A program made the translations under genes and the position numbers. DNA of 63,951 nucleotides, filler included, from Octopus bimaculoides (lineage: Eukaryota), in the NCBI RefSeq assembly GCF_001194135.2. It is 7 parts of 7 records of this genome, joined end to end, with 100 filler letters (N's around TTAATTAATTAA, not from the genome) between each part and the next. Parts side by side here need not be neighbours in the genome. Positions count along the whole stretch, not along the records: positions 1 to 11,762 come from NC_068989.1; 6 more parts are not named here. One strand, written 5' to 3'. Positions 1-20,217 of the stretch are shown here, one piece after another. The notes under the pieces are model-generated. The model saw nothing but the letters and a program-made list of their open reading frames with translations, made no database searches and had not been told where the DNA came from. Numbering within the stretch: position 1 is the stretch's first letter; each line of letters opens with the position of its first letter.

Positions 1-180
1 AACTAGTGCTGATGCGTTTACACCCCTATCACTAAGCAGTTTGACAAAAGAGACTGATAGAAGTAAGTACCAGGCTTTTAAAAATTTAAGTACTGGGGTT
101 GGTTCATTCGACTACAATGTTTCCAAGGCAATGCCCCAGCATGGCTGCAGTCTAATGACTGAAACAAGTGACAGATAAAA
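1..180 (+). mobile_element. 3' half of tRNA-derived SINE (5' part outside window)
   Basis: Same body and tail as the full copy at 49127-49575 (...gactgatagaagtaagtaccaggc...gccccagcatggctgcagtctaatgactgaaacaag). Confidence 0.8.
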
Positions 181-1264
181 GATAACGATTCAGATTTAAA
201 TTTAGTTTTTGACAAAACATTTAATCATTTTGTGACCATATTCCTGATCAAAGATATTGACTAAATTTCAATTAACTTTGAAAGTAATGAAAAAATTTGA
301 AGGATCTAATAAAATAAATAACTTTCTTACTTATCAGTAAATTAAGCTGTTGTTTGAAACATAACTTAAATTTTTTTTATATACAAAATTAAAATATATA
401 GTTTAATTATATATATGTAGACTTTAAGAACAGGCAGTTAGGGAGTCTCGGTCAGTATGAAAAAAAGCTAAACAGACAAGAAATTTATCATGACTGGTAA
501 TGGAAACATCAAACTCAGGGATCCCCAAACTTTTTCATGGAATCATTGATCCCTCAGCAACATCAGGCATGTACAAAAAAATAAATTAATAATAATAATA
601 ATAATTTAGTAGATGTGCAGTTTCCATGTTTTCTAGAGTTTGTCATAACCTCCTTACATCCTCAGTCATCACATAAATATTTCCTTCAAATAAATATATA
701 ACCACACATTGGTCATTATTATAGCTCATAATTAAAAATGTGTATAAGCAAGTTGTATTTTATGTAGTTTTACTTCTTAAACAAACGTCAACATTTGAAC
801 CCAAAAGTTCATTTGACCCTGGCATTTATCAACCCCCTTTTTACCCCCAGGCATTTATTGACCCCTTGAAGAGCCCCACTGACCCCCACAGCTCAATATT
901 GACTTCTTTGGAGACCCCTGATCTAACTACTCACAAACCATATATCTGTTTAGTCCACAGAAAAATAAGCAAATTTAGTAAAACAATTCTAAAAGTCAAA
1001 AGTAATTAACAGTTCAGAGCTTCATGTTGAGTAATTTTGTCTTAGACATTCCAAGTTTTACTACAGCTATTTTATACACTGGTCTCTGTAGGGTTTCATT
1101 AGGCCATAAGCATGCTACAATAATATATAACATATATGTGGAACTACTTCCCTAAAATGTGAAAAAATTCCATAGCATCACAGGAAAGAGATTGCTTAGG
1201 ACAATAACAGCTATTAGCTTGAATTAAAGTAACAAAAGAAAATGAAGAAATAAACTTTCATTAC

Positions 1265-1389
1265 CTCTTTTAATGGAATCTCACTCTTCAGAGATTGCTC
1301 TATCCACTGGAAAGATACAACCCAACATTTATGGGCAATACCTTGAAAATATTTCAGTGTACGATCACAGTAACGCACCTGTGGAGATA
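1265..1389 (-). CDS. BRCA1: BRCA1 BRCT1 exon (equivalent to human exons 18+19)
   Basis: Acceptor ttttgtttag, donor gtaatg, 125 nt, phase 1 to 0. Translates (V)[41 protein letters not shown], matching from memory BRCA1 [37 protein letters not shown]. Confidence 0.88.
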
Positions 1390-1998
1390 CTAAACAAAAT
1401 ATTTGTTTCTTTTACTGTCTGAAAGGCCAGTATGAGTAAAAGCATTAATGTTAATAAAGGTTAACATAGCAATTAGTGATATGATAACCACATCAAACAA
1501 AAGTAACAAGTATGCTAAAAGGTTCATCACAGCTAAACTTTCTTGTTAAATATTTATAGATGAGGAAACTTTTTTAGTGTGAAGTTTGTAGGTAAAGAAA
1601 CTAAGATGATAAGAGAAAAATTGAGAAAGGCATCAGGCTGGTTTAGGTGGTGGATAGTTACACAGTTTGCTAGTTCAGGAGAGCTGAAGTTGTTGAAAGA
1701 TGCAGAGAAGAAACAGTGATCTGTGAATCAGTGACTGTTACCTGCTGGGGTGAGTGAATCTTTTCATGAACCATCCACATTAAAGCCAATTAATTTGTTA
1801 CATTTTTTTTCTTTGCAGATATTAGAGTTGAATATGGTCTATATATTTCAATCATCAAATCAACATTTTTCATACACAGTCAAGTAAGGATCAATAGATT
1901 CAACATATCAAATATACCATCTTGATAATCTCTCTCTCCTTCACCAAATATACAATTCTGTATAAAGAATTCAGTTTCTAATATTTCAACAGAATAAA

Positions 1999-2165
1999 AG
2001 GTGTCAAGCTGGCAGAATCATTAGCACACTGGCAAAATGCTTAGTGGCATTTCATCTGTCTCTAGGCTCTGAGTTCAAATTCCGCCTTTCATCTTTCTGG
2101 GGTTAATAAAATAAGTACCAGTTGAATACTGGGGATGATGTAATCAAATTATTTCCTCCCCCATA
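1999..2165 (+). mobile_element. SINE with Deu/Nin-like core
   Basis: gctggcagaatcattagcac...gagttcaaattccgcc..tttcatctttctggggttaataaaataagtaccag; same family as many copies in the window. The Deu/Nin label comes from recalled similarity of the gcctttcatcc...gataaattaagtacc motif. Confidence 0.7.
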
Positions 2166-2284
2166 AGTGCTGGCTTAGTACCAAAATTTGAAATCAATAC
2201 TTCAACAGATATGATGAAACTATACTTCAACTGAACATTTTAATTTATATCCTAATTAGAGAATGTATGCAAAATTCTGCTTAC

Positions 2285-2372
2285 CTGTCTTTACTATAAC
2301 ATGTGTTACTTCTGATGAGAATTGCAAAGAAAACTTATACCCAACTTTATCACAAAACTGTTTGACTTTATG
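2285..2372 (-). CDS. BRCA1: BRCA1 BRCT1 exon (equivalent to human exon 17)
   Basis: Acceptor atatttgcag, donor gtaagc, 88 nt, phase 0 to 1. Translates HKVKQFCDKVGYKFSLQFSSEVTHVIVKT, compared with human [29 protein letters not shown]. Splices in frame to 1389-1265. Confidence 0.85.
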
Positions 2373-3351
2373 CTGCAAATATATTGATTATCTATCATTA
2401 ACTTCAAGTCTGCATGTGTGGAAATTTCTATTCAAGAGAACTTATTTCTCAGTGTTGAATGACACTTAATATGAAAGAGAACCAATAATTATTTCAGTCG
2501 GTAACAACTTGGTATTTATTACCAAGTTGAAAATAATTTAGATTAAAAAAGCACCAAATATTAACTCAACAGTAAATAATATAAAAACAAACTGATTAGA
2601 TCTCTAAAGTTATCAATAAAGCTCTCCTGCAAACTACAGGAAGCTTATAACATATATTCAAACATGTCTTATGAAGAAGTATTAAATGTCAATAGTCTTA
2701 AAACCAACAAATACATCAAATGCCATAATTATCACATCTCCAGACACAGCCATTACAGAGACAGACATGAAAAGAAAAACACAGTAAGGGAAATAAAAAG
2801 TTACTCCTGAAGTTGGGATAGTACAATGATTTCCTTTCATTACAAAAATTTCACACACACACAGAAGCAATCCAACAGAAAATTCACATTAAAAAGGATC
2901 TTCAATAACTACAACACAGATAGAAATTGTTATATCATCAATATAATGAAATGTAATGTAATGTAGCTTGAAATATCACTATAATTCATTTTAAAATGAG
3001 AATAACATCCCTGACTAAGGGCTGTCATTCCACCATCAAAAGCTGAAAAACAGCTACAAAACACTTGTAGATCTGTTATTCAACCAGTCTTTAGCTTTCA
3101 AAGATCATGAGCAACTCTGACAAAATAAATAAATAAGAAAATGGCTAAGATGGCTGTTACAAGCCATTCATCCATTCCTAATTACCTCATTTCCTCCCAG
3201 ATTATAAAATCTTTCTTGTTTTAACTGCTCACAACTCTAATAGTTAGCTGCCTCACCAAAAGTACAGTATATATGACTCTAGAACCAGTTGCAAGCTAAA
3301 ACGAACCTACTCAAAAGATGTGCAATGATTTTTTTCTATCACCTTCATTCA

Positions 3352-3680
3352 TCATCATCATCATCATTTAACATCCATCTTCCATGCTGGCATGCATTAG
3401 ATGGTTTGACCAGAGCTGGTAAGCTGGAAAGTCACACCAGGCTCCAGTCATCTGTTTTGGATTGATTTCTACAGTTAGAGGCCCTTCCTAATGCTAACCA
3501 CTTTACAGAGGTTCTGGGTGTCTTTTACATGTCACCAGTACAGGTGCCTTTTACGCGTCGCCAGTATCATCATCATCATCATCATCATCATCGTTTAACG
3601 TCCGCTTTCCATGCTAGCATGGGTTGGACGATTTGACTGAGGACTGGTGAAACCGGATGGCAACACCAGGCTCCAGTCTG
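3352..3680 (-). mobile_element. Two 3'-terminal fragments of RTE-type LINE with (GAT)n tails
   Basis: (cat)n followed by ttaacgtccgctttccatgctagcatgggttggacg, the reverse complement of the 3' end attached to the RT-coding copies at 7660 and 27862. Confidence 0.75.
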
Positions 3681-3822
3681 CAGCCATGCTGGGGCATTGC
3701 CTTGGAAACATTGTAGTCGAATGAACCAACCCCAGTACTTAAATTTTTAAAAGCCTGGTACTTACTTCTATCAGTCTCTTTTGTCAAACTGCTTAGTGAT
3801 AGGGGTGTAAACGCATCAGCAC
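3678..3822 (-). repeat. Exact inverted duplicate of positions 6-150 (SINE segment)
   Basis: Base-by-base comparison: the reverse complement of 3678-3822 equals 6-150. It ends at the gap starting at 3823. Confidence 0.9.
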
Positions 3823-4879
3823 NNNNNNNNNNNNNNNNNNNNNNNNNNNNNNNNNNNNNNNNNNNNNNNNNNNNNNNNNNNNNNNNNNNNNNNNNNNNNN
3901 NNNNNNNNNNNNNNNNNNNNNNNNNNNNNNNNNNNNNNNNNNNNNNNNNNNNNNNNNNNNNNNNNNNNNNNNNNNNNNNNNNNNNNNNNNNNNNNNNNNN
4001 NNNNNNNNNNNNNNNNNNNNNNNNNNNNNNNNNNNNNNNNNNNNNNNNNNNNNNNNNNNNNNNNNNNNNNNNNNNNNNNNNNNNNNNNNNNNNNNNNNNN
4101 NNNNNNNNNNNNNNNNNNNNNNNNNNNNNNNNNNNNNNNNNNNNNNNNNNNNNNNNNNNNNNNNNNNNNNNNNNNNNNNNNNNNNNNNNNNNNNNNNNNN
4201 NNNNNNNNNNNNNNNNNNNNNNNNNNNNNNNNNNNNNNNNNNNNNNNNNNNNNNNNNNNNNNNNNNNNNNNNNNNNNNNNNNNNNNNNNNNNNNNNNNNN
4301 NNNNNNNNNNNNNNNNNNNNNNNNNNNNNNNNNNNNNNNNNNNNNNNNNNNNNNNNNNNNNNNNNNNNNNNNNNNNNNNNNNNNNNNNNNNNNNNNNNNN
4401 NNNNNNNNNNNNNNNNNNNNNNNNNNNNNNNNNNNNNNNNNNNNNNNNNNNNNNNNNNNNNNNNNNNNNNNNNNNNNNNNNNNNNNNNNNNNNNNNNNNN
4501 NNNNNNNNNNNNNNNNNNNNNNNNNNNNNNNNNNNNNNNNNNNNNNNNNNNNNNNNNNNNNNNNNNNNNNNNNNNNNNNNNNNNNNNNNNNNNNNNNNNN
4601 NNNNNNNNNNNNNNNNNNNNNNNNNNNNNNNNNNNNNNNNNNNNNNNNNNNNNNNNNNNNNNNNNNNNNNNNNNNNNNNNNNNNNNNNNNNACTGTTCCC
4701 TGTGAGTAGGTCCTCTTTCTCTCACTCTGACTGTCTCTAAATTTCTCTCCTTCTCTCTTCCACCTTCTTTTGCTTCCTTGTCCTACTGGAGAAGTGAAGT
4801 ATCTCCTCTACAGTAAGACAGGTATCCCTGTCACTCTATCATACTTCAACCTCTCGCTTTGCTCACAGCCACTTCTCCT

Positions 4880-5400
4880 GGTTGCTTTCCCTCTCTCATT
4901 TGAGATGTCCTTGTCTTGTAAGCTACTTAGCAACTCCACAGGTTCTGGTGCCACACAGACAGCATCCCTGTCAATGCCATGTAAAAAGCACCCAGTACTG
5001 TAAAGTGGTTGGCATTAAGAAGGGCATCCAGCTGTAGAAATCATGCCAAAACATGACTGGAGCCTGGTACAGCCCTCTAGCTTGTCAGCTCCTGTCAAAC
5101 CATCCAACCCATGACAGCTTAGAAAATGGACCGTACATGATGATGATGATGATGATAATTGCGAATCAAATCTATTGAATCAGTCATCATCATCATCACC
5201 ATCACCATCTTTTAATGTCTGTCTTTCATGCTGGCACGGTTGGGGTGATTTGACAGAATCCAATCAGTCCAATTATGCCCCAATATCTGCTTTGACATGT
5301 TTTCTAAAGCTGGATATACCCTTCCTAACATCAACCACTTAACAGAGTGTATTTGGTGTGTTTTCCATAGCACCAGCATGTAACTTGCAAAACTAAAACC
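4880..5400. mobile_element. RTE 3'-UTR fragments in opposite orientations
   Basis: The + copy ends ...aaaatggaccgtacatgatgatgatgat (~5155). A - copy starts catcatcat...ttaatgtctgtctttcatgctggc (~5185). Confidence 0.65.
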
Positions 5401-6560
5401 CACATTGACTGAGTTAAACTACAGTAGAGAGGTATGTGGTTTTATGGGATGAGGGATTAAAGTATGAGAGAAGGGAGCCAAAACAACAGATTTCTAGCAA
5501 CTCATACTATAGAGGTTGGGGGTAACAGGGGTGGGGCTGCAAAGAGATAAAGTACTGATGATGATTTACCAGGGTGGACCCTGAAGGTACAAGAAGGTGA
5601 GTAGATGGAAGTGGGATAGAACAATGGAGAATGAGGGTGGGTGGGAAGTATGGTTAGAGACAGGAAATGGCTGGGGTGGGACAAATATAAAGGACAAGGT
5701 TTGAGAGGTGGTTGATGATAAAATGATGCTGGGGGGAAAGAAAGGAGAGAGTAGGTGATGACTGTAGAGATTTGATATGCTTGAGTGGGGATGTAGTGAA
5801 GGGTGGACAAGAATGGAAAGATGATTGATAACATATTAGTTAGAGGAAGGTAGAGGAAAGTAGGTAATGATTAACAGTACTACAATACTTTCAACCACTA
5901 CTTCAACACCTTCAAACACTACTACAACACACTTAGACACCACTACAACACTCCCAAACACTACTGCAACTCCCACAAACACTACAACACTATTTCTCAC
6001 TCAGATTCAGTAAATGCATACAAAATAAACAGCAGCATCAATAACCACATTGTCTAAACATTCTGTTGAGATGTGGTGCCATATGATCAAAGAACCAACA
6101 ACTATTGCATTCCTGTGGAATTCATGTTGCTTGTTACCAATAGACTCCAAGTGGAGAATATGCAACATGTTCAGACTACTGTGGTTATACCCCATATGTC
6201 AATGTACAGTATGATACCCAACTAGATACAGAAGGCACAGTATATCTGGGGTACTAGATTGGAAGAGTACATTTATTCATTAAACTGATTAGCTACCTGT
6301 CATAAGTCATTGCATCAGGACCAACCAGGGTTACACAACCACAAGAAGAAGCAGTTTCATTGTTAGTTACAACAGGAAAGACAATTTTCATATAACTGCT
6401 TTATGTTGTTTAAAAGAATACTGGAAAGATGAGCTGTATCAGATTTATACTCCTTATTTATTGGCATTACATCTATTTCCTTCTGAACCTGCTGAATTAT
6501 TTTATTTTGTTTTATACTAGTGAATGAAAACATATTACTAAGCTATCTTTTGGTTTTTAG

Positions 6561-6696
6561 GCTGATTTTGAAATCACTGGTGATACTGTTAATGGTAAAC
6601 ATCACAGAGGGCCAACACGATCACGTCTATCAAATACAAATCTTTTAACATCCTATCAAATTTATTTTACTGGGGAAACCTCTGAACTACCATTAG
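6561..6696 (+). CDS. BRCA1: BRCA1 inter-BRCT linker/BRCT2-start exon (equivalent to human exons 20+21)
   Basis: Acceptor tggtttttag, donor gttagt, 136 nt, phase 0 to 1. Translates ADFEITGDTVNGKHHRGPTRSRLSNTNLLTSYQIYFTGETSELPL, compared with human [46 protein letters not shown]. Confidence 0.88.
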
Positions 6697-7659: not shown

Positions 7660-10050
7660 TATCATCGTCATCATCGTTTAATGTCCGCTTTCCATGCTGA
7701 CATGGGTTGGACAGTTTGACTGGGGGCTGGCAAGCCAGAAGGCTGCACTAGGCTCCAGTCTGATCTGGCAAAGTTTCTACAGCTGGATGCCATTCCTAAC
7801 ACCAACCACTCCAAGAGTGTAGTGGGTGCTTTTCACATGCCACCAGTATGAGGGCCAGTCAGGTGACACTGGCATCGACCATGCTCGAATGGTGCTTTTT
7901 ATGTGCCACCGGCACAGGTGTCAGTCAGGTGGTTCTGTCATCAGCCATGACAATGACATCACTTGACTCAACAGGTCTTTGCAAGTGCAGTTTATTGTCC
8001 AATGATTGAAGTGTACTCTTGGATGGGCTGGTTATTCTGCACTGGCATAGGCCATGGTCACAGTCTCACCCGGCTTGCTGAGTCTTCTCAAGCACAGCAT
8101 ATCTCCAAAGGTCTAGGTCACTTGTCATCGCCTCCGTGAGGCCCAACGTTCGAAGGTTGTGCTTCAACACCTTATCCTAGGTCTTCTTGGGTCTACCTCT
8201 TCCACAGGTTCCCTCTACTGCTAGGCTGTGGCACTTTTTCACACAGCTCTCCTCATCCATATGCAATACATGACCATACCAGTGCAGTTGTCTCTCTTGC
8301 ACACCACATCTGATGCTTCTTACGTCCAACTTTTCTCTCATAGTGCTTACGTTCTGTCATGTTTGCAACTGACATTACACATCCAGTGGAGCATACTAGC
8401 TTCATTCCTTGCAAGCTTACGCATATCCTCAGCAGTCATGGTCCATGTTTCACTGCCATGTAGCATGGCTGTTCACACACCTGTCATACAGTCTACCTTT
8501 TACTCTGAGCGAGAGGCCCTTTGTCACCAGCAGAGGTAGGAGCTCTCTGAACTTTACCCAGGCTATTCCTATTCTAGCAGCTACACTCACAGAGCATCTG
8601 CCTGTTACTAACTTGGTCACCTAGGTAATGGAAGCTATCAACTACTTGTAGTTTTTCCCCATGGAATTTGACGGAAGCTGTTTTCTGTACATTTTCAGTG
8701 TTTATTGCCCCTGAGCATTTTCCACACACAAAAACTATCTTCCCAGTTAGCCTTCCTTTGATATTGCTGCACCTTTTATGTGTCTATAGCTTGCACTGGG
8801 TACATCTTACGGAGTTTCTACCTACGCCTTTTCTACATATCGAGCAGGGCCATCTACCTGAAGGGATTTTTGATTTGTCTGCCTTCCTGCTTATTAAGAC
8901 TTTAGTTTTTGCCATATTGACTCTAAGGGCCTTTGATTCTAGACCTTGCTTCCACACCTGAAACTTCTCCTCTAGTTCAGATAGTGACTCTGCTATCCTG
9001 TCTTGAATTCTACTGTTATTGCCTAGAGGACTATGATGAATAAAAGGGCTGAGGACTGATCCTTGGTGGACCCCTACCCGGAAGTCTTCACTGTACTCGT
9101 TGCCAACCCTCACCTTACTGACAGCATCCCTGTACACGGCTTGTACAGCTCTCACTAACCATTCATCTATCCCTAGTTTCCTCATTGACCACCAGATAAG
9201 GGATCAGGGGACCCTGTCAGAGGCTTTCTCCATGTCAATGAAAGCCAGGTATAAAGGTTTATCTTTGGCTAGGTATTTCTTCTGTAGCTGTCTTACCAGA
9301 AATATAGCATCAGTGGTGCTTTTCCCTGGCACGAATCCAAACTGCATCTCTTCTAAACTGACTCTCTCCTTTATTAGTTGGGCAATGACCCTTTCATTAC
9401 TTGCTCCAACAACTATCATTACCTGCTCCAACAAGTTTTATTACCTGTTCCAACAACTAGATACCTCTATAGTTATTCGTATCTAATGCATAACCTTTAC
9501 CTTTGTGGCAGTTGACTATGGTGCTGCTACACATTAACCTATTTTTCCACAAGAAGTATACCCACGCCCATCAGTGTCCCTTGCCCAGAAAATCTAATAC
9601 CTATGTTCTTTGCCTGTGAGGAACCTAGCAGAACTTCCTCTCCACCTTACTTCTTGGATGCAGCACAAATCTACACGTTTCCAGTCAAGCATCTCAACAA
9701 TTTCACCAGACTTACCTTTCAGTGTGCCAGCTCTGAGTGTGAGGGAAGTGAGACCCTGGGACGAGAGACAGCAGCATCATGTACCTGAAAAGAAAGCTTG
9801 CATTTGGCAAAACTCATAAACATACAATAGCCCTCAACCTTCATACACTACATCATAATTTTATGCACTACATAATCACTACATTACATAGGAGATAAAA
9901 CCTAAGTAGAGATGGGAATATTAAGCCTTTGGCGGTGTTCATGGCAGAGACATCTGATAGAGGTCAGACTTCCGGGACAGGTGGTGGAGGTGGGAGTGGT
10001 GGGTGCATCATGAAACAGCAAAGACTCAGGCTGCCAGAGGGAGAAAATAT
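7660..10050 (-). mobile_element. Degenerate, internally deleted RTE-clade LINE (APE start, RT, 3'UTR)
   Basis: RT fragments QFGFVPGKSTTDAIFLVRQLQKKY, AFIDMEKASDRVP, VGVHQGSVLSP. APE N-terminus GTLKGKSGEIVEM...DLCCIQE near 9650-9730. (GAT)n tail at 7660. Many stops and frameshifts. Confidence 0.85.
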
Positions 10051-10145: not shown

Positions 10146-12108
10146 CTAGCAGTATAGCCTGGCATTGCCTGGGATTAAGTTAGGACTATTAAGCGATCAG
10201 GCACTTTATTTCAAACCAAAATAAGTGACACCAGCATCAAATTCGCATGAAATCCGTTGAAATTGATAAACATTTGGCTGAAAATGGGTTGCAGGCAATT
10301 TGATTGGGAAATCCCATAAGGAATCGGTTTATCGATTATTTCCACTCATCGATTTTTTTTTTGAGAACTTAAAGCATTCAAAGATCCCATGAGTCCTAAG
10401 TAATGCTGGTATCAAGTTTGAGCAAAATACATCAAAATTGGTAAAAGTTATGGTTGAAAATGGGGTATAGCCAATTTTAGTGGGAAATCCTATAAGGAAT
10501 CGGTTTATCAATTGAATGGAAAACCCCAAATGGATGCCTGCCACTGATAATGTTTGGCCTTGGGATTTGTTGATGGACATGGCAAAGCATGGTCTCACCA
10601 GGAACTGCAATCTGCAGAAGTTAAACAGCATGTCTGACCCCGAGGGTAAAGCTGCATCCTTGAAATGAAAAGATTTTCAACCCTCCTGCACCCTGTAACA
10701 TGCATGTTTGTGCGTAGGCTTAAGTCTTAACCTGGGGCCACAACATGGATGACTTAAGGCATGTGTGCACTTCATCAGCCTGGCTCCCTTTAAGGATGAC
10801 AGGAAGGGTTTGCTGGAAATCTCCTGAAAGCAATAGAGTTACACCACCCATAGAAGCTGTATAATCCCTGGTACCTTTCAGTGATCAGTCCAGTGCCTCA
10901 AGGGCACCCTTATTGGTCATTGTGCATTTGTCCCATACAATGAGACAGCACTGTCTAAGAACTTCAGCTTCCTCTGAATTTTTGCCAATGCTGCAAGTAG
11001 GAACCTCGGCCCTCAACAAATCTAAAGGCAGCTTGAATGCTGAGTGCGCCATCCTACCTCGCGGCAATAATGTAGCAGCGATTCCCGAGGAAGCAATGGC
11101 TAGTGCAATTTGCTTCTCGCGACGAATCTTAGCAAGTATTAATTATGTTACAAAGGATTTGCTGGTACCTCTAGGAGCATCGAGGAAAAAAATGCTGCCT
11201 GCCTGTTTTTCAATGGCACTGACGACAGTTTTGTACACCAGTCTCTGATCAGGGAGCAATTTCGGTTCATTTACTCTCAGGTACTCCGCAAGGCCATCAG
11301 CATCATACAACTCCAGAAGTAACTTTGGTGGGAGTGTGTTAACATCCTATCGCAATGAGGATGGCAAACCGAATGTGTTCAATACGCCCCACCCATTTTG
11401 AGCAGGGCATCCTCGATTTCAATTAGCGCATTATTGTAGATCAGGTCATTGTATCCAATGTCAGCATTAGGGCACTGTTGCTTTGCTAGTCATCATTTGC
11501 CTTGACCAAGAAAGCAAAATTACATACAGAGAATTTCATAAACAGGAATGAATGGATAAATGGTTGGTAAATTTTTAGATTAACACTCGCATGATTTGCA
11601 CTAAGAAAAAAAATAATCGGATTTTTTGTGTGGAATTTTTTGTGGTCCGAAAAACAGGGTAGAGTGTGGTGGAAGCCTCGGAAATTTCGCTCCCCACACC
11701 CATTGATCTTTTCACCATCTATTTTTCAATGTACATGGAAATATACGGAGATTAAGAATATGNNNNNNNNNNNNNNNNNNNNNNNNNNNNNNNNNNNNNN
11801 NNNNNNTTAATTAATTAANNNNNNNNNNNNNNNNNNNNNNNNNNNNNNNNNNNNNNNNNNNNACGAAATTTAAAAAATCTGTTATCTCTCTCCCTTTATT
11901 TACACCATCGCTAAAAGGGGACTTAACTCATGCTCCAACTTGAAAATTGTTAGAAGTTATGGTTTAAAATTATTTTTAATACAAAAATTCACGTCTTAGG
12001 AAGCAATAAAAAAAATAATAAATGGCCGATTCCGGGCATTTTCGACCATGAGGAATCCATTGGTGTGACTCCCAGATTGCTATCTTGTAAAGTGTGGATT
12101 TCTATAGA
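10146..12108 (-). mobile_element. Non-autonomous Helitron with both termini and PIF1 helicase remnants (spans a gap)
   Basis: 5' A|TCTATAG at 12108. 3' CTAG|T at 10146, preceded by a cccaggcaatgccagg hairpin. PIF1 pieces LPRGRMAHSAFKLPL, LIVWDKCTMTNKGALEALD and RLQFLVRPCFAMSINKSQGQTL. Confidence 0.8.
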
Positions 12109-17217: not shown

Positions 17218-17840
17218 CTAGCAGAAACACCCGGCGTTGCCTGGGTTAAAGAGAATAATGAAATCTAAAAACGCCGTCTAGACTACGATACCATATTTCT
17301 ACATTAATAACTCTCCAATCCATGCCAGCATGGAACATAGATATTAAGTGGAATGCTAGAAGAAAGTTTTCAACTCATATGTATATAAAGTAAATACACG
17401 TAATTCAGAAACACGTTTTGTGTATTTTATTTCATAACCAAACAAACATATACAGATTATAAATAATGAAAGGCCAAATTTGGTGATTCATTTGACAGAG
17501 GTAGTAGAGAGACAATGCGATGATAAATCTGAGGTTGGATCTTGAAAGTTTGGATGAATGCTGCCTCAGTTAAATCTCTTGTGGTTCCAAATGATGTCAT
17601 CTGTAGTACAGCGTCGTATTGTCTAATTTTGTTTTGCAAATGTTAGGAATCTTGGTCAGTTGATGATAACAGTTTCTTCAATAGCTCTGGAGGTTGGGGA
17701 TTGTGGAATTGTTGGGAATATTTTTAACTTTGGTGTTATATGTATTGCTTGAAATATATGTATTTTCACTGGGTTTGTAAAAGAGAGTTATGTAGCTCTC
17801 GAGTTTTAGGGATTCACACAGACAGACAGACACACATTCT
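17218..17840 (-). mobile_element. Non-autonomous Helitron
   Basis: 3' CTAG|T at 17218 with a cccaggcaacgccggg hairpin. Helitron N-terminal-like peptide IRQYDAVLQMTSFG...FKIQPQIYHRIVSLLP. The 5' region matches the Helitron start at 63642. Confidence 0.75.
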
Positions 17841-17940: not shown

Positions 17941-20217
17941 TCATTAAATCTATGCAATATCACCGCTCCTATGCCATATTCACTGGCATCTGATTCCACA
18001 ATTATTTTCAGATTTGGGTCGAAATGAGTTAATGATAACTCTGATGTTAACCATTTTTTTTAGTTCCTCGAATGATTTCTGACATTCATTTGTCCAGCTC
18101 CATTTCTAGTCCTTCTTTAGCAACTTATTCAACGGAGCTCTTAGCTCATACATTTTAGGTCTGGTAATAATTTACCAAACCTAAAAATGCTTGTAGTGTT
18201 GTTTTGTTAGTGGGAGCAGGTATGTTTTTTATCGCGTCAATCCTAGAAGGGTCCGGTTTTCGTCCGTTTTCATTGATCACCTGTCCTAAGTAGTTTATTT
18301 CTGTGAAGAAAAATTCACATTTATCCTCCCTTACCTTAAACCTGTAATCACATATTCGTTTGAAAACCTTTTTTATATGTTCAATATGTTGGTCCCTTGA
18401 TTCATTTTTGATCAATATGTCATCTAAATATGGGACCGCGAACTCACAATCTGCTAGCATAGTATCTATTACTTGCTGAAATATTGCTGGTGCAACCTTT
18501 ACCCCAAATGGCAGTCTTTTGAAACGGTACAGACCTTTATGAGTATTGATTGTTAATACTTTAGCACATTCTTCATCTACCAGTAATTAGAGGTAGGTCT
18601 CTGACAAATCCAGCTTGGAAAAAATTTTCCCACCATTGCACTTATCAACTGTTCTTCTTTCTTATATATACTGTAGAAGCTGCCCACTCAGAGTAGTCTA
18701 CTTTTTCAATTACTTCCATGTCTTCCAATCTTTTAAATTCCTTCTCAACTTGATTTAACGCCACAAAAGGTACATTCCTTTTCGGTTTGAACACAGGCAC
18801 TGCATTTTCTTTCAACTCAAACTTTACTTTAATTTTTTTACACATACTGAGCTCTTTCGTAAAAATATCAGGGTACATCTTTTTCAATTTTAATTTCACT
18901 TTTTCCGATGCTTTCTCTGACACGGACTGTGACGCATTCACCTTGTTACATAATGTATTCAGTGATAGATCTCATAGGTCAAATCCTTCCATTAAATCTG
19001 TCCCGAACAGATTCATTGTATTCTTAGATACCATTAGTTTACATTTCCACGTCCTGATTTTAAGTTTTATTTCTGGTGAAATTTTGCCCTAGAATTGAAC
19101 TCATTCCCCTGACACACCATGGGCTGTCCTAGTAGTTTTTTTATACAACAGCCTGCCTATCTTACTCCATGTACTTATTATTGATACGTCTGAACCGGTA
19201 TCTAATTGCATTTTGGTCTGAAACCCATTTATTTCTACCAACACAATTTTCGGTTTTGTCTGGTATAATTTACTTTTGTTGAGTAGACTTTCTTTGGTTT
19301 TACAATTTTCTTCAAATGGCATTTCATCTGTATATGCCCAATTTTACCACACTTAAAACATGTTTTATCTTTAAAGGGGCAATCTTTCCACAAATGTTGG
19401 TCTCCGCAACTACAGCACTGTTTTGAATTGATATATTTTCTTCTGTCTGTACTTTCTTTACACATTTGTACATTCTTATTATTGTCTTCTATTTTTCTTG
19501 TATCATCTCAAAGGTTGATTATTTGTTAGCATTCCTCAGACACTTTCTACAAGGTTAGTTTCACATCTTGATTCAGCTTTGATAATATTCTTTTTCTAAT
19601 TTCCGTGTCTTCTGTTGTCACTAGTCCTTTAACGAATATTAGGCACTTGAACATAGTGTTAATTCTTCCAGCTTAAACCTTTCGCAAGCCTTGTTAACCA
19701 CACCGGCTTATATTACAAAATCGTCAGACTCGTTTTTCTTTAAATTTAAACATTCCCATNNNNNNNNNNTTCACTAGACCATCCCTTGCATTCCCCTCGG
19801 AATATGTCTTCGTATCGTCTGTAATATGCAGCAAAAGTAGTTCCTTTATCCGGATTGTAGTGAAATTCTTTGATGGAATTTGCAACATCATCTGCTGAAA
19901 ATGATTCTGTACTATTTCTCGCCTGCAGTAACAATTCTCTTAACTTCTGTAGTTGCTGCTGCTCTTGTTGTTTTACAACTGCTTTCAGTAACTCTTCCAT
20001 TTCGGTACTATTCAAAAGTGGCTGTGTGAGCTACAAAATCCTCATCACCACTGTTTTATCACAATACTACACAGTGGCTGTGTGATCTACGAAATCCTTG
20101 TCACCACTGTTATATCGCACGTCCAGATGACCTCTAGTCAACTACCTCGACATTTAGACTTCTCCCTCTATATCTATGTATTGGGCTAGCCTACTTCATC
20201 GTGTGGGGGCGTCAACA
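17941..20217 (-). mobile_element. Gypsy/Ty3 LTR retrotransposon 5' half (LTR, PBS, gag, PR, RT, RNaseH start), degenerate
   Basis: Gag zinc knuckles (CCSCGDQHLWKDC, CFKCGKIGHIQMKC), protease LDTGSDVSII, RT PYLDDILI, RNase[15 protein letters not shown]. Putative LTR TGTTGA...ATAACA at 20217-20108, followed by a GTGGTGAC PBS-like motif. Confidence 0.88.

What the first reader, a model, noticed from the sequence alone, without database searches (positions are those of the whole stretch)
1265..6696. Consecutive BRCA1 BRCT exons lie on opposite strands
Seen: 2372-2285 (-) splices in frame to 1389-1265 (-), which ends ...PLKE in phase 0. The very next BRCA1 peptide (ADFEITGDTVNG..., phase 0) is on the + strand at 6561-6696. 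All three exons have intact splice sites and no stops. Known: these segments are contiguous in the BRCT1-linker-BRCT2 region. Inference: flipping the 1-3822 block restores a normal gene, so mis-orientation of the contig is the most likely cause. Alternatives are a real or polymorphic inversion that breaks BRCT1, or trans-splicing. Automatic annotation would split or miss this gene.
Basis: partly seen in the sequence, partly recalled or inferred. Interest (0 to 1): 0.75.

Follow-up and report, generated by a model that had tools for sequence, protein, structure and literature searches.

The report
Octopus BRCA1 exons flipped by mis-scaffolding
Three consecutive exons of the octopus BRCA1 gene do lie on opposite strands here, but the switch happens across an unsequenced gap next to a small contig with identical inverted ends, so it is most likely a draft-assembly orientation error and not biology.

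Summary
Exons at 2372-2285(-), 1389-1265(-) and 6561-6696(+) have AG/GT splice sites. Spliced, they give 116 aa matching the human BRCA1 BRCT region (E 2.5e-21) across the strand switch. The window is the Octopus bimaculoides draft assembly (XP_014790196.1 maps at 100%). In Argonauta hians the same three exons have the same lengths (88/125/136 nt) and phases and lie in order on one strand within 1.7 kb.

The strand switch falls on the gap at 3823-4691, so no sequenced base joins the two orientations. Contig 1 (1-3822) ends in a perfect 145-148 nt inverted repeat (6-153 / 3675-3822). Its right arm stops exactly at the gap, so the contig's ends say nothing about its orientation. Both exon sets are under purifying selection (dN/dS 0.15 and 0.06), which rules out an old gene break.

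Best reading: the scaffolder mis-oriented a 3.8-kb contig (about 0.85). A recent or polymorphic inversion flanked by the repeat is not excluded (about 0.08). No independent Octopus assembly or transcript was reachable to settle it.

The parts
2285..2372 (-). BRCA1 exon A (BRCT1, 88 nt, HKVKQF...VIVKT plus 1 nt). It corresponds to A. hians exon L001:17352-17439 and, from my own knowledge, to human exon 17 (also 88 nt).
1265..1389 (-). BRCA1 exon B (rest of BRCT1, 125 nt, ends ...PLKE in phase 0). It corresponds to A. hians L001:18486-18610.
6561..6696 (+). BRCA1 exon C (inter-BRCT linker and start of BRCT2, 136 nt, ADFEITGD...SELPL plus 1 nt). It corresponds to A. hians L001:18903-19038.
3823..4691 (.). 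Assembly gap (869 N, estimated size). It is the only link between the minus-strand exons and the plus-strand exon.
6..153 (+). Left arm of the perfect terminal inverted repeat of contig 1 (6-150 identical to the reverse complement of 3678-3822). It starts 5 nt from the edge of the piece.
3675..3822 (-). Right arm of the terminal inverted repeat. It ends exactly at the gap. Its inner edge abuts a truncated (ATC)n-tailed SINE-like copy, with 3-6 nt of microhomology (ctg at 3678-3680).
2664..2783 (+). First exon of the NCBI model XP_014790196.1. It lies antisense to BRCA1 inside contig 1 and has no counterpart in the A. hians locus, so it is probably filler that gives the truncated model a start codon.
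6144..6237 (+). Second exon of XP_014790196.1. It is not BRCA1-like and has no counterpart in A. hians, so it is probably filler.

Best explanation
The window is part of the fragmented short-read Octopus bimaculoides assembly. It carries three consecutive exons of the single BRCA1 orthologue. Exons A and B sit on a small contig (1-3822). The scaffolder joined that contig, across an unsequenced gap, to the contig carrying exon C, and it did so in the wrong orientation. The contig's two ends are the same 145-148 nt sequence in inverted orientation. Reads or links that anchor in either end are therefore equally compatible with both orientations, and only links from the unique interior could orient the contig. 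That makes an error easy. Turning 1-3822 around gives exon A, exon B, about 4 kb of intron including the gap, then exon C, which is the order seen in a related octopod.

Shown: the exon identities, their contiguity in BRCA1, that the strand switch coincides with the gap, the terminal inverted repeat, and purifying selection on both parts.
Inferred: that the scaffolder, and not the genome, produced the orientation.
For: 1. The strand switch coincides with the gap at 3823-4691, so no sequenced base spans it.
2. A. hians BRCA1 (GAB1603383.1, locus L001) has exons of identical length and phase (88/125/136 nt), all on one strand in the order A, B, C within 1.7 kb. The window aligns to them minus, minus, plus.
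3. A+B and C-plus-downstream match complementary, non-overlapping parts of the human BRCA1 tandem BRCT: 1JNX chain positions 33-82 and 88-210.
4. Contig 1 has a perfect terminal inverted repeat (145/145), with its right arm ending at the gap and its left arm 5 nt from the piece start. There is no other copy in the window or in the 30-kb A. hians locus.
5. dN/dS against A. hians is 0.15 for A+B and 0.064 for C. Splice sites are intact and there are no stops.
6. The assembly has about 714,000 contigs for 2.34 Gb, so contigs of a few kb joined only by paired links are the rule (PMC10700109).
7. The published gene models are split exactly at this point.
Against: No independent assembly, long read, mate-pair mapping or transcript of O. 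bimaculoides or a close Octopus species could be retrieved (searches were empty), so the orientation was not tested directly.

The inner junction of the right repeat arm (3677/3678) joins two unrelated repeats through only 3-6 nt of microhomology. A k-mer assembler would not invent such a join, so the inverted repeat is probably real DNA. An inverted segment flanked by a perfect inverted duplication, with one native and one novel inner junction, is also what a real staggered-break inversion would leave.

The NCBI model splices 2783(+) to 6144(+) across the gap. If RNA-seq supported that splice, it would favour the present orientation.
Confidence: 0.85

Rival explanations
1. A real, recent or polymorphic inversion of about 3.5 kb carries BRCA1 exons A and B. 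It is flanked by a perfect inverted duplication of at least 148 nt. Either the inversion created the duplication (staggered breaks or template switching), or recombination between pre-existing inverted repeats flipped the segment. Skipping the inverted exons would stay in frame (213 nt) but would remove 71 aa of BRCT1. That would probably be a loss-of-function allele carried heterozygously by the sequenced animal.
For: A perfect inverted repeat lies exactly at the two ends of the discordant block. The left arm's inner junction continues smoothly into the same repeat element. That judgement rests on my recollection of the octopus SINE consensus and no tool checked it. The right arm's inner junction is a novel join with ctg microhomology to a truncated SINE-like copy, and this asymmetry is what a single staggered-break inversion predicts. 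The exons are undecayed, which fits a very young event. A+B is 213 nt, so skipping them is in frame.
Against: One breakpoint lies in the gap and the other at or beyond the edge of the piece, so neither outer junction is sequenced. By my estimate, not a measurement, mis-oriented small contigs in an assembly of about 714,000 contigs outnumber real exon-inverting polymorphisms by orders of magnitude. BRCA1 BRCT is strongly constrained (dN/dS 0.06-0.15), and the orthologue in A. hians is collinear.
Confidence: 0.08
2. Two partial BRCA1 copies lie close together. A minus-strand copy contributes A and B, a plus-strand copy contributes C onward, and each has its missing exons outside the sequenced parts.
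For: Nothing excludes it directly. The gap and the sequence left of position 1 are unseen.
Against: The two sets are exactly complementary, with no overlap and no missing residue. There is no exon C-like sequence in the 1264 nt downstream of B on the minus strand. There is no exon B-like sequence in the 1869 nt upstream of C on the plus strand, whereas the B-C intron of A. hians is only 292 nt. Both sets are under purifying selection.
Confidence: 0.04
3. The arrangement is real, and the gene is expressed by trans-splicing two pre-mRNAs made from opposite strands, as in Drosophila mod(mdg4).
For: Exon B keeps a good donor (GTAATG) and exon C a good acceptor (TTTTAG).
Against: Intact sites are equally expected for an ordinary cis-spliced gene. 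There is no transcript evidence. The orthologue in A. hians is an ordinary collinear gene. As far as I know, nothing comparable is known for BRCA1 in any animal.
Confidence: 0.01

Closest known systems
Local contig mis-orientation in mate-pair scaffolded short-read assemblies, especially segments bounded by inverted repeats (the same ambiguity as the flip-flop of the plastid small single-copy region between its inverted repeats)
   Same: A unique segment is bounded by identical inverted sequences. Both orientations give the same junction sequences. The orientation switch coincides with a gap, and flipping one contig restores collinearity with an orthologue.
   Different: This is a nuclear intronic repeat with at least 148 nt visible. 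The assembler's actual link evidence could not be inspected.
Human BRCA1 tandem BRCT region (PDB 1JNX and relatives) and its exons 17-21
   Same: The sequence matches at E 2.5e-21 across the junction. From my own knowledge of NM_007294, exon 17 is c.4987-5074 (88 nt), exon 19 ends at c.5193 in phase 0, and exon 21 ends at c.5332 in phase 1. Those boundaries coincide with the octopus A/B boundary, the B/C boundary and the end of C.
   Different: Octopus exon B corresponds to human exons 18 and 19 fused, with a 2-aa insertion. Octopus exon C corresponds to human exons 20 and 21 fused. The RING domain and the central part of the gene are not in the window.
Argonauta hians BRCA1 homologue GAB1603383.1 (GCA_054771915.1, BAAFZT010000031.1)
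   Same: Exon lengths (88/125/136 nt) and phases are identical. Amino-acid identity is 79-91 %. Nucleotide identity is 86 % over the two alignments covering exons A and B and 79.5 % over a 176-nt alignment that covers exon C and runs into the intron on both sides.
   Different: All its exons lie on one strand. Its B-C intron is 292 nt, against about 4 kb implied here. No copy of the inverted-repeat sequence is present in 30 kb.
Inversions that carry inverted duplications at their breakpoints (the staggered-break model described for Drosophila inversions), and SINE/Alu-mediated rearrangements of human BRCA1
   Same: The inverted block is flanked by a perfect inverted duplication. The breakpoints lie in SINE-like repeats inside BRCA1 introns.
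   Different: Neither outer junction is sequenced here, so membership cannot be shown. The human events that I know of are mostly deletions and duplications, not inversions.

Membership tests
BRCA1 orthologue (tandem BRCT region) | The sequence matches the BRCT domain family. | tested here: met
   Pfam PF00533, E 2.4e-8, 34.5 bits against a cut-off of 21.3.
BRCA1 orthologue (tandem BRCT region) | Each part is closer to BRCA1 than to other BRCT proteins such as BARD1. | tested here: met
   A+B: BRCA1 at 4.8e-10 against BARD1 at 9e-5. C plus downstream: BRCA1 at 1.6e-13 with no BARD1 hit. Combined: 2.5e-21 against 2.7e-6.
BRCA1 orthologue (tandem BRCT region) | The three exons are consecutive in one orthologous gene, with conserved intron positions. 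| tested here: met
   A. hians P0003 residues 669-785 map to A, B and C without gap or overlap. Its exons are 88/125/136 nt with the same phases, on one strand.
BRCA1 orthologue (tandem BRCT region) | An N-terminal RING domain is present in the same gene. | not testable with these tools
   No upstream exon is in the window. Even the exon just before A (A. hians ...HLVTTGLSNVDV) was not found.
Scaffolding mis-orientation artefact | The orientation change coincides with a contig boundary or gap, with no spanning sequence. | tested here: met
   The gap at 3823-4691 lies between the discordant exons.
Scaffolding mis-orientation artefact | Flipping a single contig restores order and orientation relative to an orthologous locus. 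| tested here: met
   The window aligns to L001 at 17346-17444 (minus), 18471-18626 (minus) and 18896-19071 (plus).
Scaffolding mis-orientation artefact | An independent assembly or long reads show the other orientation. | not testable with these tools
   No other Octopus genomic or transcript sequence could be retrieved.
Real inversion | Both breakpoint junctions are sequenced in continuous reads. | tested here: not met
   One lies in the N gap and the other at or beyond position 1.
Real inversion | Inverted repeats or duplications flank the inverted segment. | tested here: met
   6-153 against 3675-3822, 148 nt at 99 %, with 145/145 perfect. This is also expected for an orientation-ambiguous contig.
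Trans-spliced gene with exons on both strands (mod(mdg4) type) | Mature transcripts join exons encoded on opposite strands of a verified genome arrangement. | not testable with these tools
   No transcript data were reachable. A protein search with the spliced peptide found only two fragment models.

The most novel reading that the evidence does not exclude
The sequenced Octopus bimaculoides carries a very young, possibly polymorphic, 3.5-kb inversion inside BRCA1. It is bounded by a perfect inverted duplication of at least 148 nt and turns two BRCT1 exons around. Splicing past them would stay in frame but would delete 71 aa of BRCT1. That would be a natural structural loss-of-function allele of BRCA1 in an invertebrate, and the repeat could allow recurrent flipping.
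Probability: 0.07. Interest if true: 0.55.

Novelty: not a real feature. Interest (0 to 1): 0.12.

Why it matters
If this is an artefact, as is likely, it matters only for annotation. Octopus BRCA1 is represented by fragments: a 73-aa model and a 195-aa model with spurious 5' exons. Comparative studies that use these models would wrongly infer a BRCA1 lacking BRCT1. Correcting the contig orientation would let the BRCT region be modelled whole. The case also shows a simple diagnostic for orientation-ambiguous contigs in draft assemblies: identical inverted sequence at both contig ends next to a gap. If the inversion were real, it would be a natural BRCA1 structural variant in a cephalopod, generated or mediated by an intronic inverted repeat.

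Tried and rejected
1. Exact look-ups of the two published fragment models found no contigs.
2. A protein search with the full A. hians BRCA1 was swamped by its low-complexity middle. It returned only a fish and a plant BRCA1 and no other cephalopod locus.
3. Exact look-ups of ten window ORFs, meant to reach independent read assemblies of the same species, found nothing.
4. I looked for the exon upstream of A, and the exons downstream of C, in the window with sensitive tblastn. They are absent, so the model continues beyond 11762 and the upstream part lies elsewhere.
5. I looked for non-coding conservation with A. hians that might orient the intron sequence on either side of the gap. Only the three exons and SINE-like repeats align.
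6. I considered the two repeat arms as independent insertions of one SINE family. I rejected that because they are identical at 145/145, and no other copy occurs in the window or in 30 kb of A. hians. In addition, the right arm stops at an internal point of the element and the sequence looks like an old CpG-decayed copy. Those last two points rest on my recollection of the octopus SINE consensus, and no tool checked them.
7. I considered a nested insertion of the (ATC)n-tailed element into a second copy of the repeat. I found no target-site duplication by reading the sequence.
8. tRNA and Rfam scans of the window were empty.
9. The Albertin 2015 genome paper could not be opened, so the assembler and library details are not cited.
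Full report
**What is there.**
- Exon A is 2372-2285(-), 88 nt.
- Exon B is 1389-1265(-), 125 nt.
- Together they read 71 codons without a stop: [71 protein letters not shown], ending in phase 0.
- Exon C is 6561-6696(+), 136 nt. It begins in phase 0 with ADFEITGDTVNGKHHRGPTRSRLSNTNLLTSYQIYFTGETSELPL.
- All six splice sites are canonical: acceptors TTGCAG, TTTTAG and TTTTAG; donors GTAAGC, GTAATG and GTTAGT.

The joined 116-aa peptide has a Pfam BRCT hit (2.4e-8). It aligns to the human BRCA1 BRCT crystal-structure sequences at E 2.5e-21. That alignment runs without a break from residue 16 to 98, across the B/C junction at residue 71/72. BARD1 is far behind at 2.7e-6.

**Source of the window.**
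A search of the large protein collection found only two relatives.
- One is a 73-aa fragment holding A+B (UniParc UPI0006956CE8).
- The other is XP_014790196.1, [quoted passage not shown], 195 aa.

XP_014790196.1 maps onto the window at 100 % for exon C. Two further 5' exons map to 2664-2783(+) and 6144-6237(+). Its last 78 residues are not in the window. So the window is the O. bimaculoides draft assembly on which that model was built, and the scaffold continues to the right of 11762. The two 5' exons have no counterpart in the orthologous Argonauta locus. One of them lies antisense inside contig 1. They look like filler that gave a truncated model a start codon.

**Do the exons belong to one gene?**
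Tested separately:
- A+B best-matches human BRCA1 at chain positions 33-82 of 1JNX (4.8e-10, against BARD1 at 9e-5).
- C plus the downstream part of XP_014790196.1 best-matches positions 88-210 of the same chain (1.6e-13).

These are complementary, non-overlapping halves of one tandem BRCT.

The 90 % cluster of the 73-aa fragment also holds an 861-aa BRCA1 homologue of Argonauta hians (GAB1603383.1). Its locus could be fetched from a 27-Mb contig (L001). Its residues 669-697, 698-739 and 740-785 map to window exons A, B and C with no gap or overlap. In A. hians the three exons are 17352-17439, 18486-18610 and 18903-19038. Their lengths are 88, 125 and 136 nt, with the same phases as in the window. 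All are on one strand and in that order. At the DNA level the window aligns to them minus, minus, plus. Nothing else aligns except SINE-like repeats.

From my own knowledge of human BRCA1 (NM_007294), exon 17 is c.4987-5074 (88 nt), exon 19 ends at c.5193 and exon 21 ends at c.5332. Those boundaries coincide with the octopus A/B boundary, the B/C boundary and the end of C. No tool checked this.

**The gap.**
The only N run inside the finding is 3823-4691 (869 N). It lies between the minus-strand exons and the plus-strand exon, in what would be an intron. No reading frame of the gene crosses it. No sequenced base connects the two orientations. The discordance therefore rests entirely on the scaffolder's decision about how to orient contig 1 (1-3822) relative to contig 2 (4692 onward).

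Contig 1 has a terminal inverted repeat. Positions 6-153 are the reverse complement of 3675-3822 (148 nt, 99 %). Positions 6-150 are identical at 145 of 145. The right arm ends exactly at the gap. The left arm starts 5 nt from the edge of the piece, which suggests that position 1 is itself a contig or scaffold end. That last point is an inference. No other copy of this sequence occurs in the window or in 30 kb of the A. hians locus.

A segment bounded by identical inverted sequences gives the same junction sequences in either orientation. Only read pairs that reach from the unique interior across a whole arm can orient it. This gives a concrete reason why a scaffolder could get this contig wrong. 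The O. bimaculoides assembly has about 714,000 contigs for 2.34 Gb (PMC10700109), so it consists largely of contigs of this size held together by paired links.

**Why a real inversion is not excluded.**
- The inner junction of the left arm (150/151) continues into what I recall as the 3' end of an abundant octopus SINE. This is memory only.
- The inner junction of the right arm (3677/3678) joins the repeat to a truncated (ATC)n-tailed SINE-like copy through only ctg or ag.ctg of microhomology.
- A k-mer assembler would not create such a join, so the inverted repeat is probably real DNA.
- One native and one novel inner junction around an inverted block is what a single staggered-break inversion would leave.
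- It is equally compatible with an older inverted duplication of about 150 nt or more, followed by an assembly orientation error.
- I found no target-site duplication that would make the right junction a simple nested retroposition.

**Age of any break.**
Against A. hians, dN/dS is 0.15 for A+B (dS 0.62) and 0.064 for C (dS 0.96). All splice sites are intact. Both exon sets have therefore been under purifying selection for most of the time since the two lineages split. An old, fixed gene break is excluded. Only an artefact or a very young or polymorphic event fits. A+B is 213 nt, so a transcript that skipped an inverted A-B block would stay in frame but would lack 71 aa of BRCT1.

**Weighing.**
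I estimate, but did not measure, that mis-oriented small contigs in an assembly like this outnumber real exon-inverting polymorphisms captured in a reference by about two orders of magnitude. The inverted repeat raises the relative likelihood of a real inversion a few-fold. It also raises the chance of an orientation error for this contig to near a coin toss.
- Mis-orientation: about 0.85.
- Real young inversion: about 0.08.
- Two partial gene copies: about 0.04. This is disfavoured because the two exon sets are exactly complementary. No partner exon lies within 1.3 kb (minus strand, below exon B) or 1.9 kb (plus strand, above exon C), whereas A. hians has a 292-nt intron there.
- Trans-splicing: about 0.01.

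**What could not be done.**

**Verdict.**
As biology it is most likely not a real feature. Its practical value is a corrected BRCA1 annotation for O. bimaculoides.

Noticed in passing
window 3351-3565, 3566-3680, 5195-5400, 7661-7990 (plus strand) and about 4950-5160 (inverted): Several copies of a SINE-like element that begins with an (ATC)n run followed by GTTTAACGTCCGCTTTCCATGCTxGCATGGGTTGGAC. They are 70-89 % alike here, and dozens of related pieces occur in the 30-kb Argonauta hians BRCA1 locus, so the family is shared by octopods.
   Followed up: partly
window about 8000-9500, minus strand (for example 9207-9434): A degenerate fragment of a reverse-transcriptase-bearing retroelement. The 76-aa ORF hits Pfam RVT_1 at E 1.8e-5 (25 bits, below the 29.6-bit cut-off). 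Neighbouring ORFs on the same strand look like further pieces of it.
   Followed up: partly
window 10268-10337 and 10444-10513: A 70-nt direct repeat at 83 % identity, 176 nt apart, inside a region of broken ORFs with no Pfam hit. Its nature is unknown.
   Followed up: no
window 2664-2783(+) and 6144-6237(+): The two 5' exons of XP_014790196.1 have canonical splice sites but no homology to BRCA1 or to the A. hians locus. If RNA-seq supported their junction across the gap, that would be the one piece of evidence for the assembled orientation. This is worth checking in the NCBI evidence tracks.
   Followed up: partly
window 1990-2215: Another SINE-like element with short matches to the A. hians locus (2084-2140 against L001 4565-4603 and 23755-23811). 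Its left part looked tRNA-like by eye, but ARAGORN found no tRNA.
   Followed up: partly
L001 18611-18902 compared with window: The B-C intron is 292 nt in A. hians. It would be about 4 kb in O. bimaculoides after flipping (1264 nt, plus an estimated 869 nt of gap, plus 1869 nt). Part of the sequenced difference is SINE-like insertions.
   Followed up: partly
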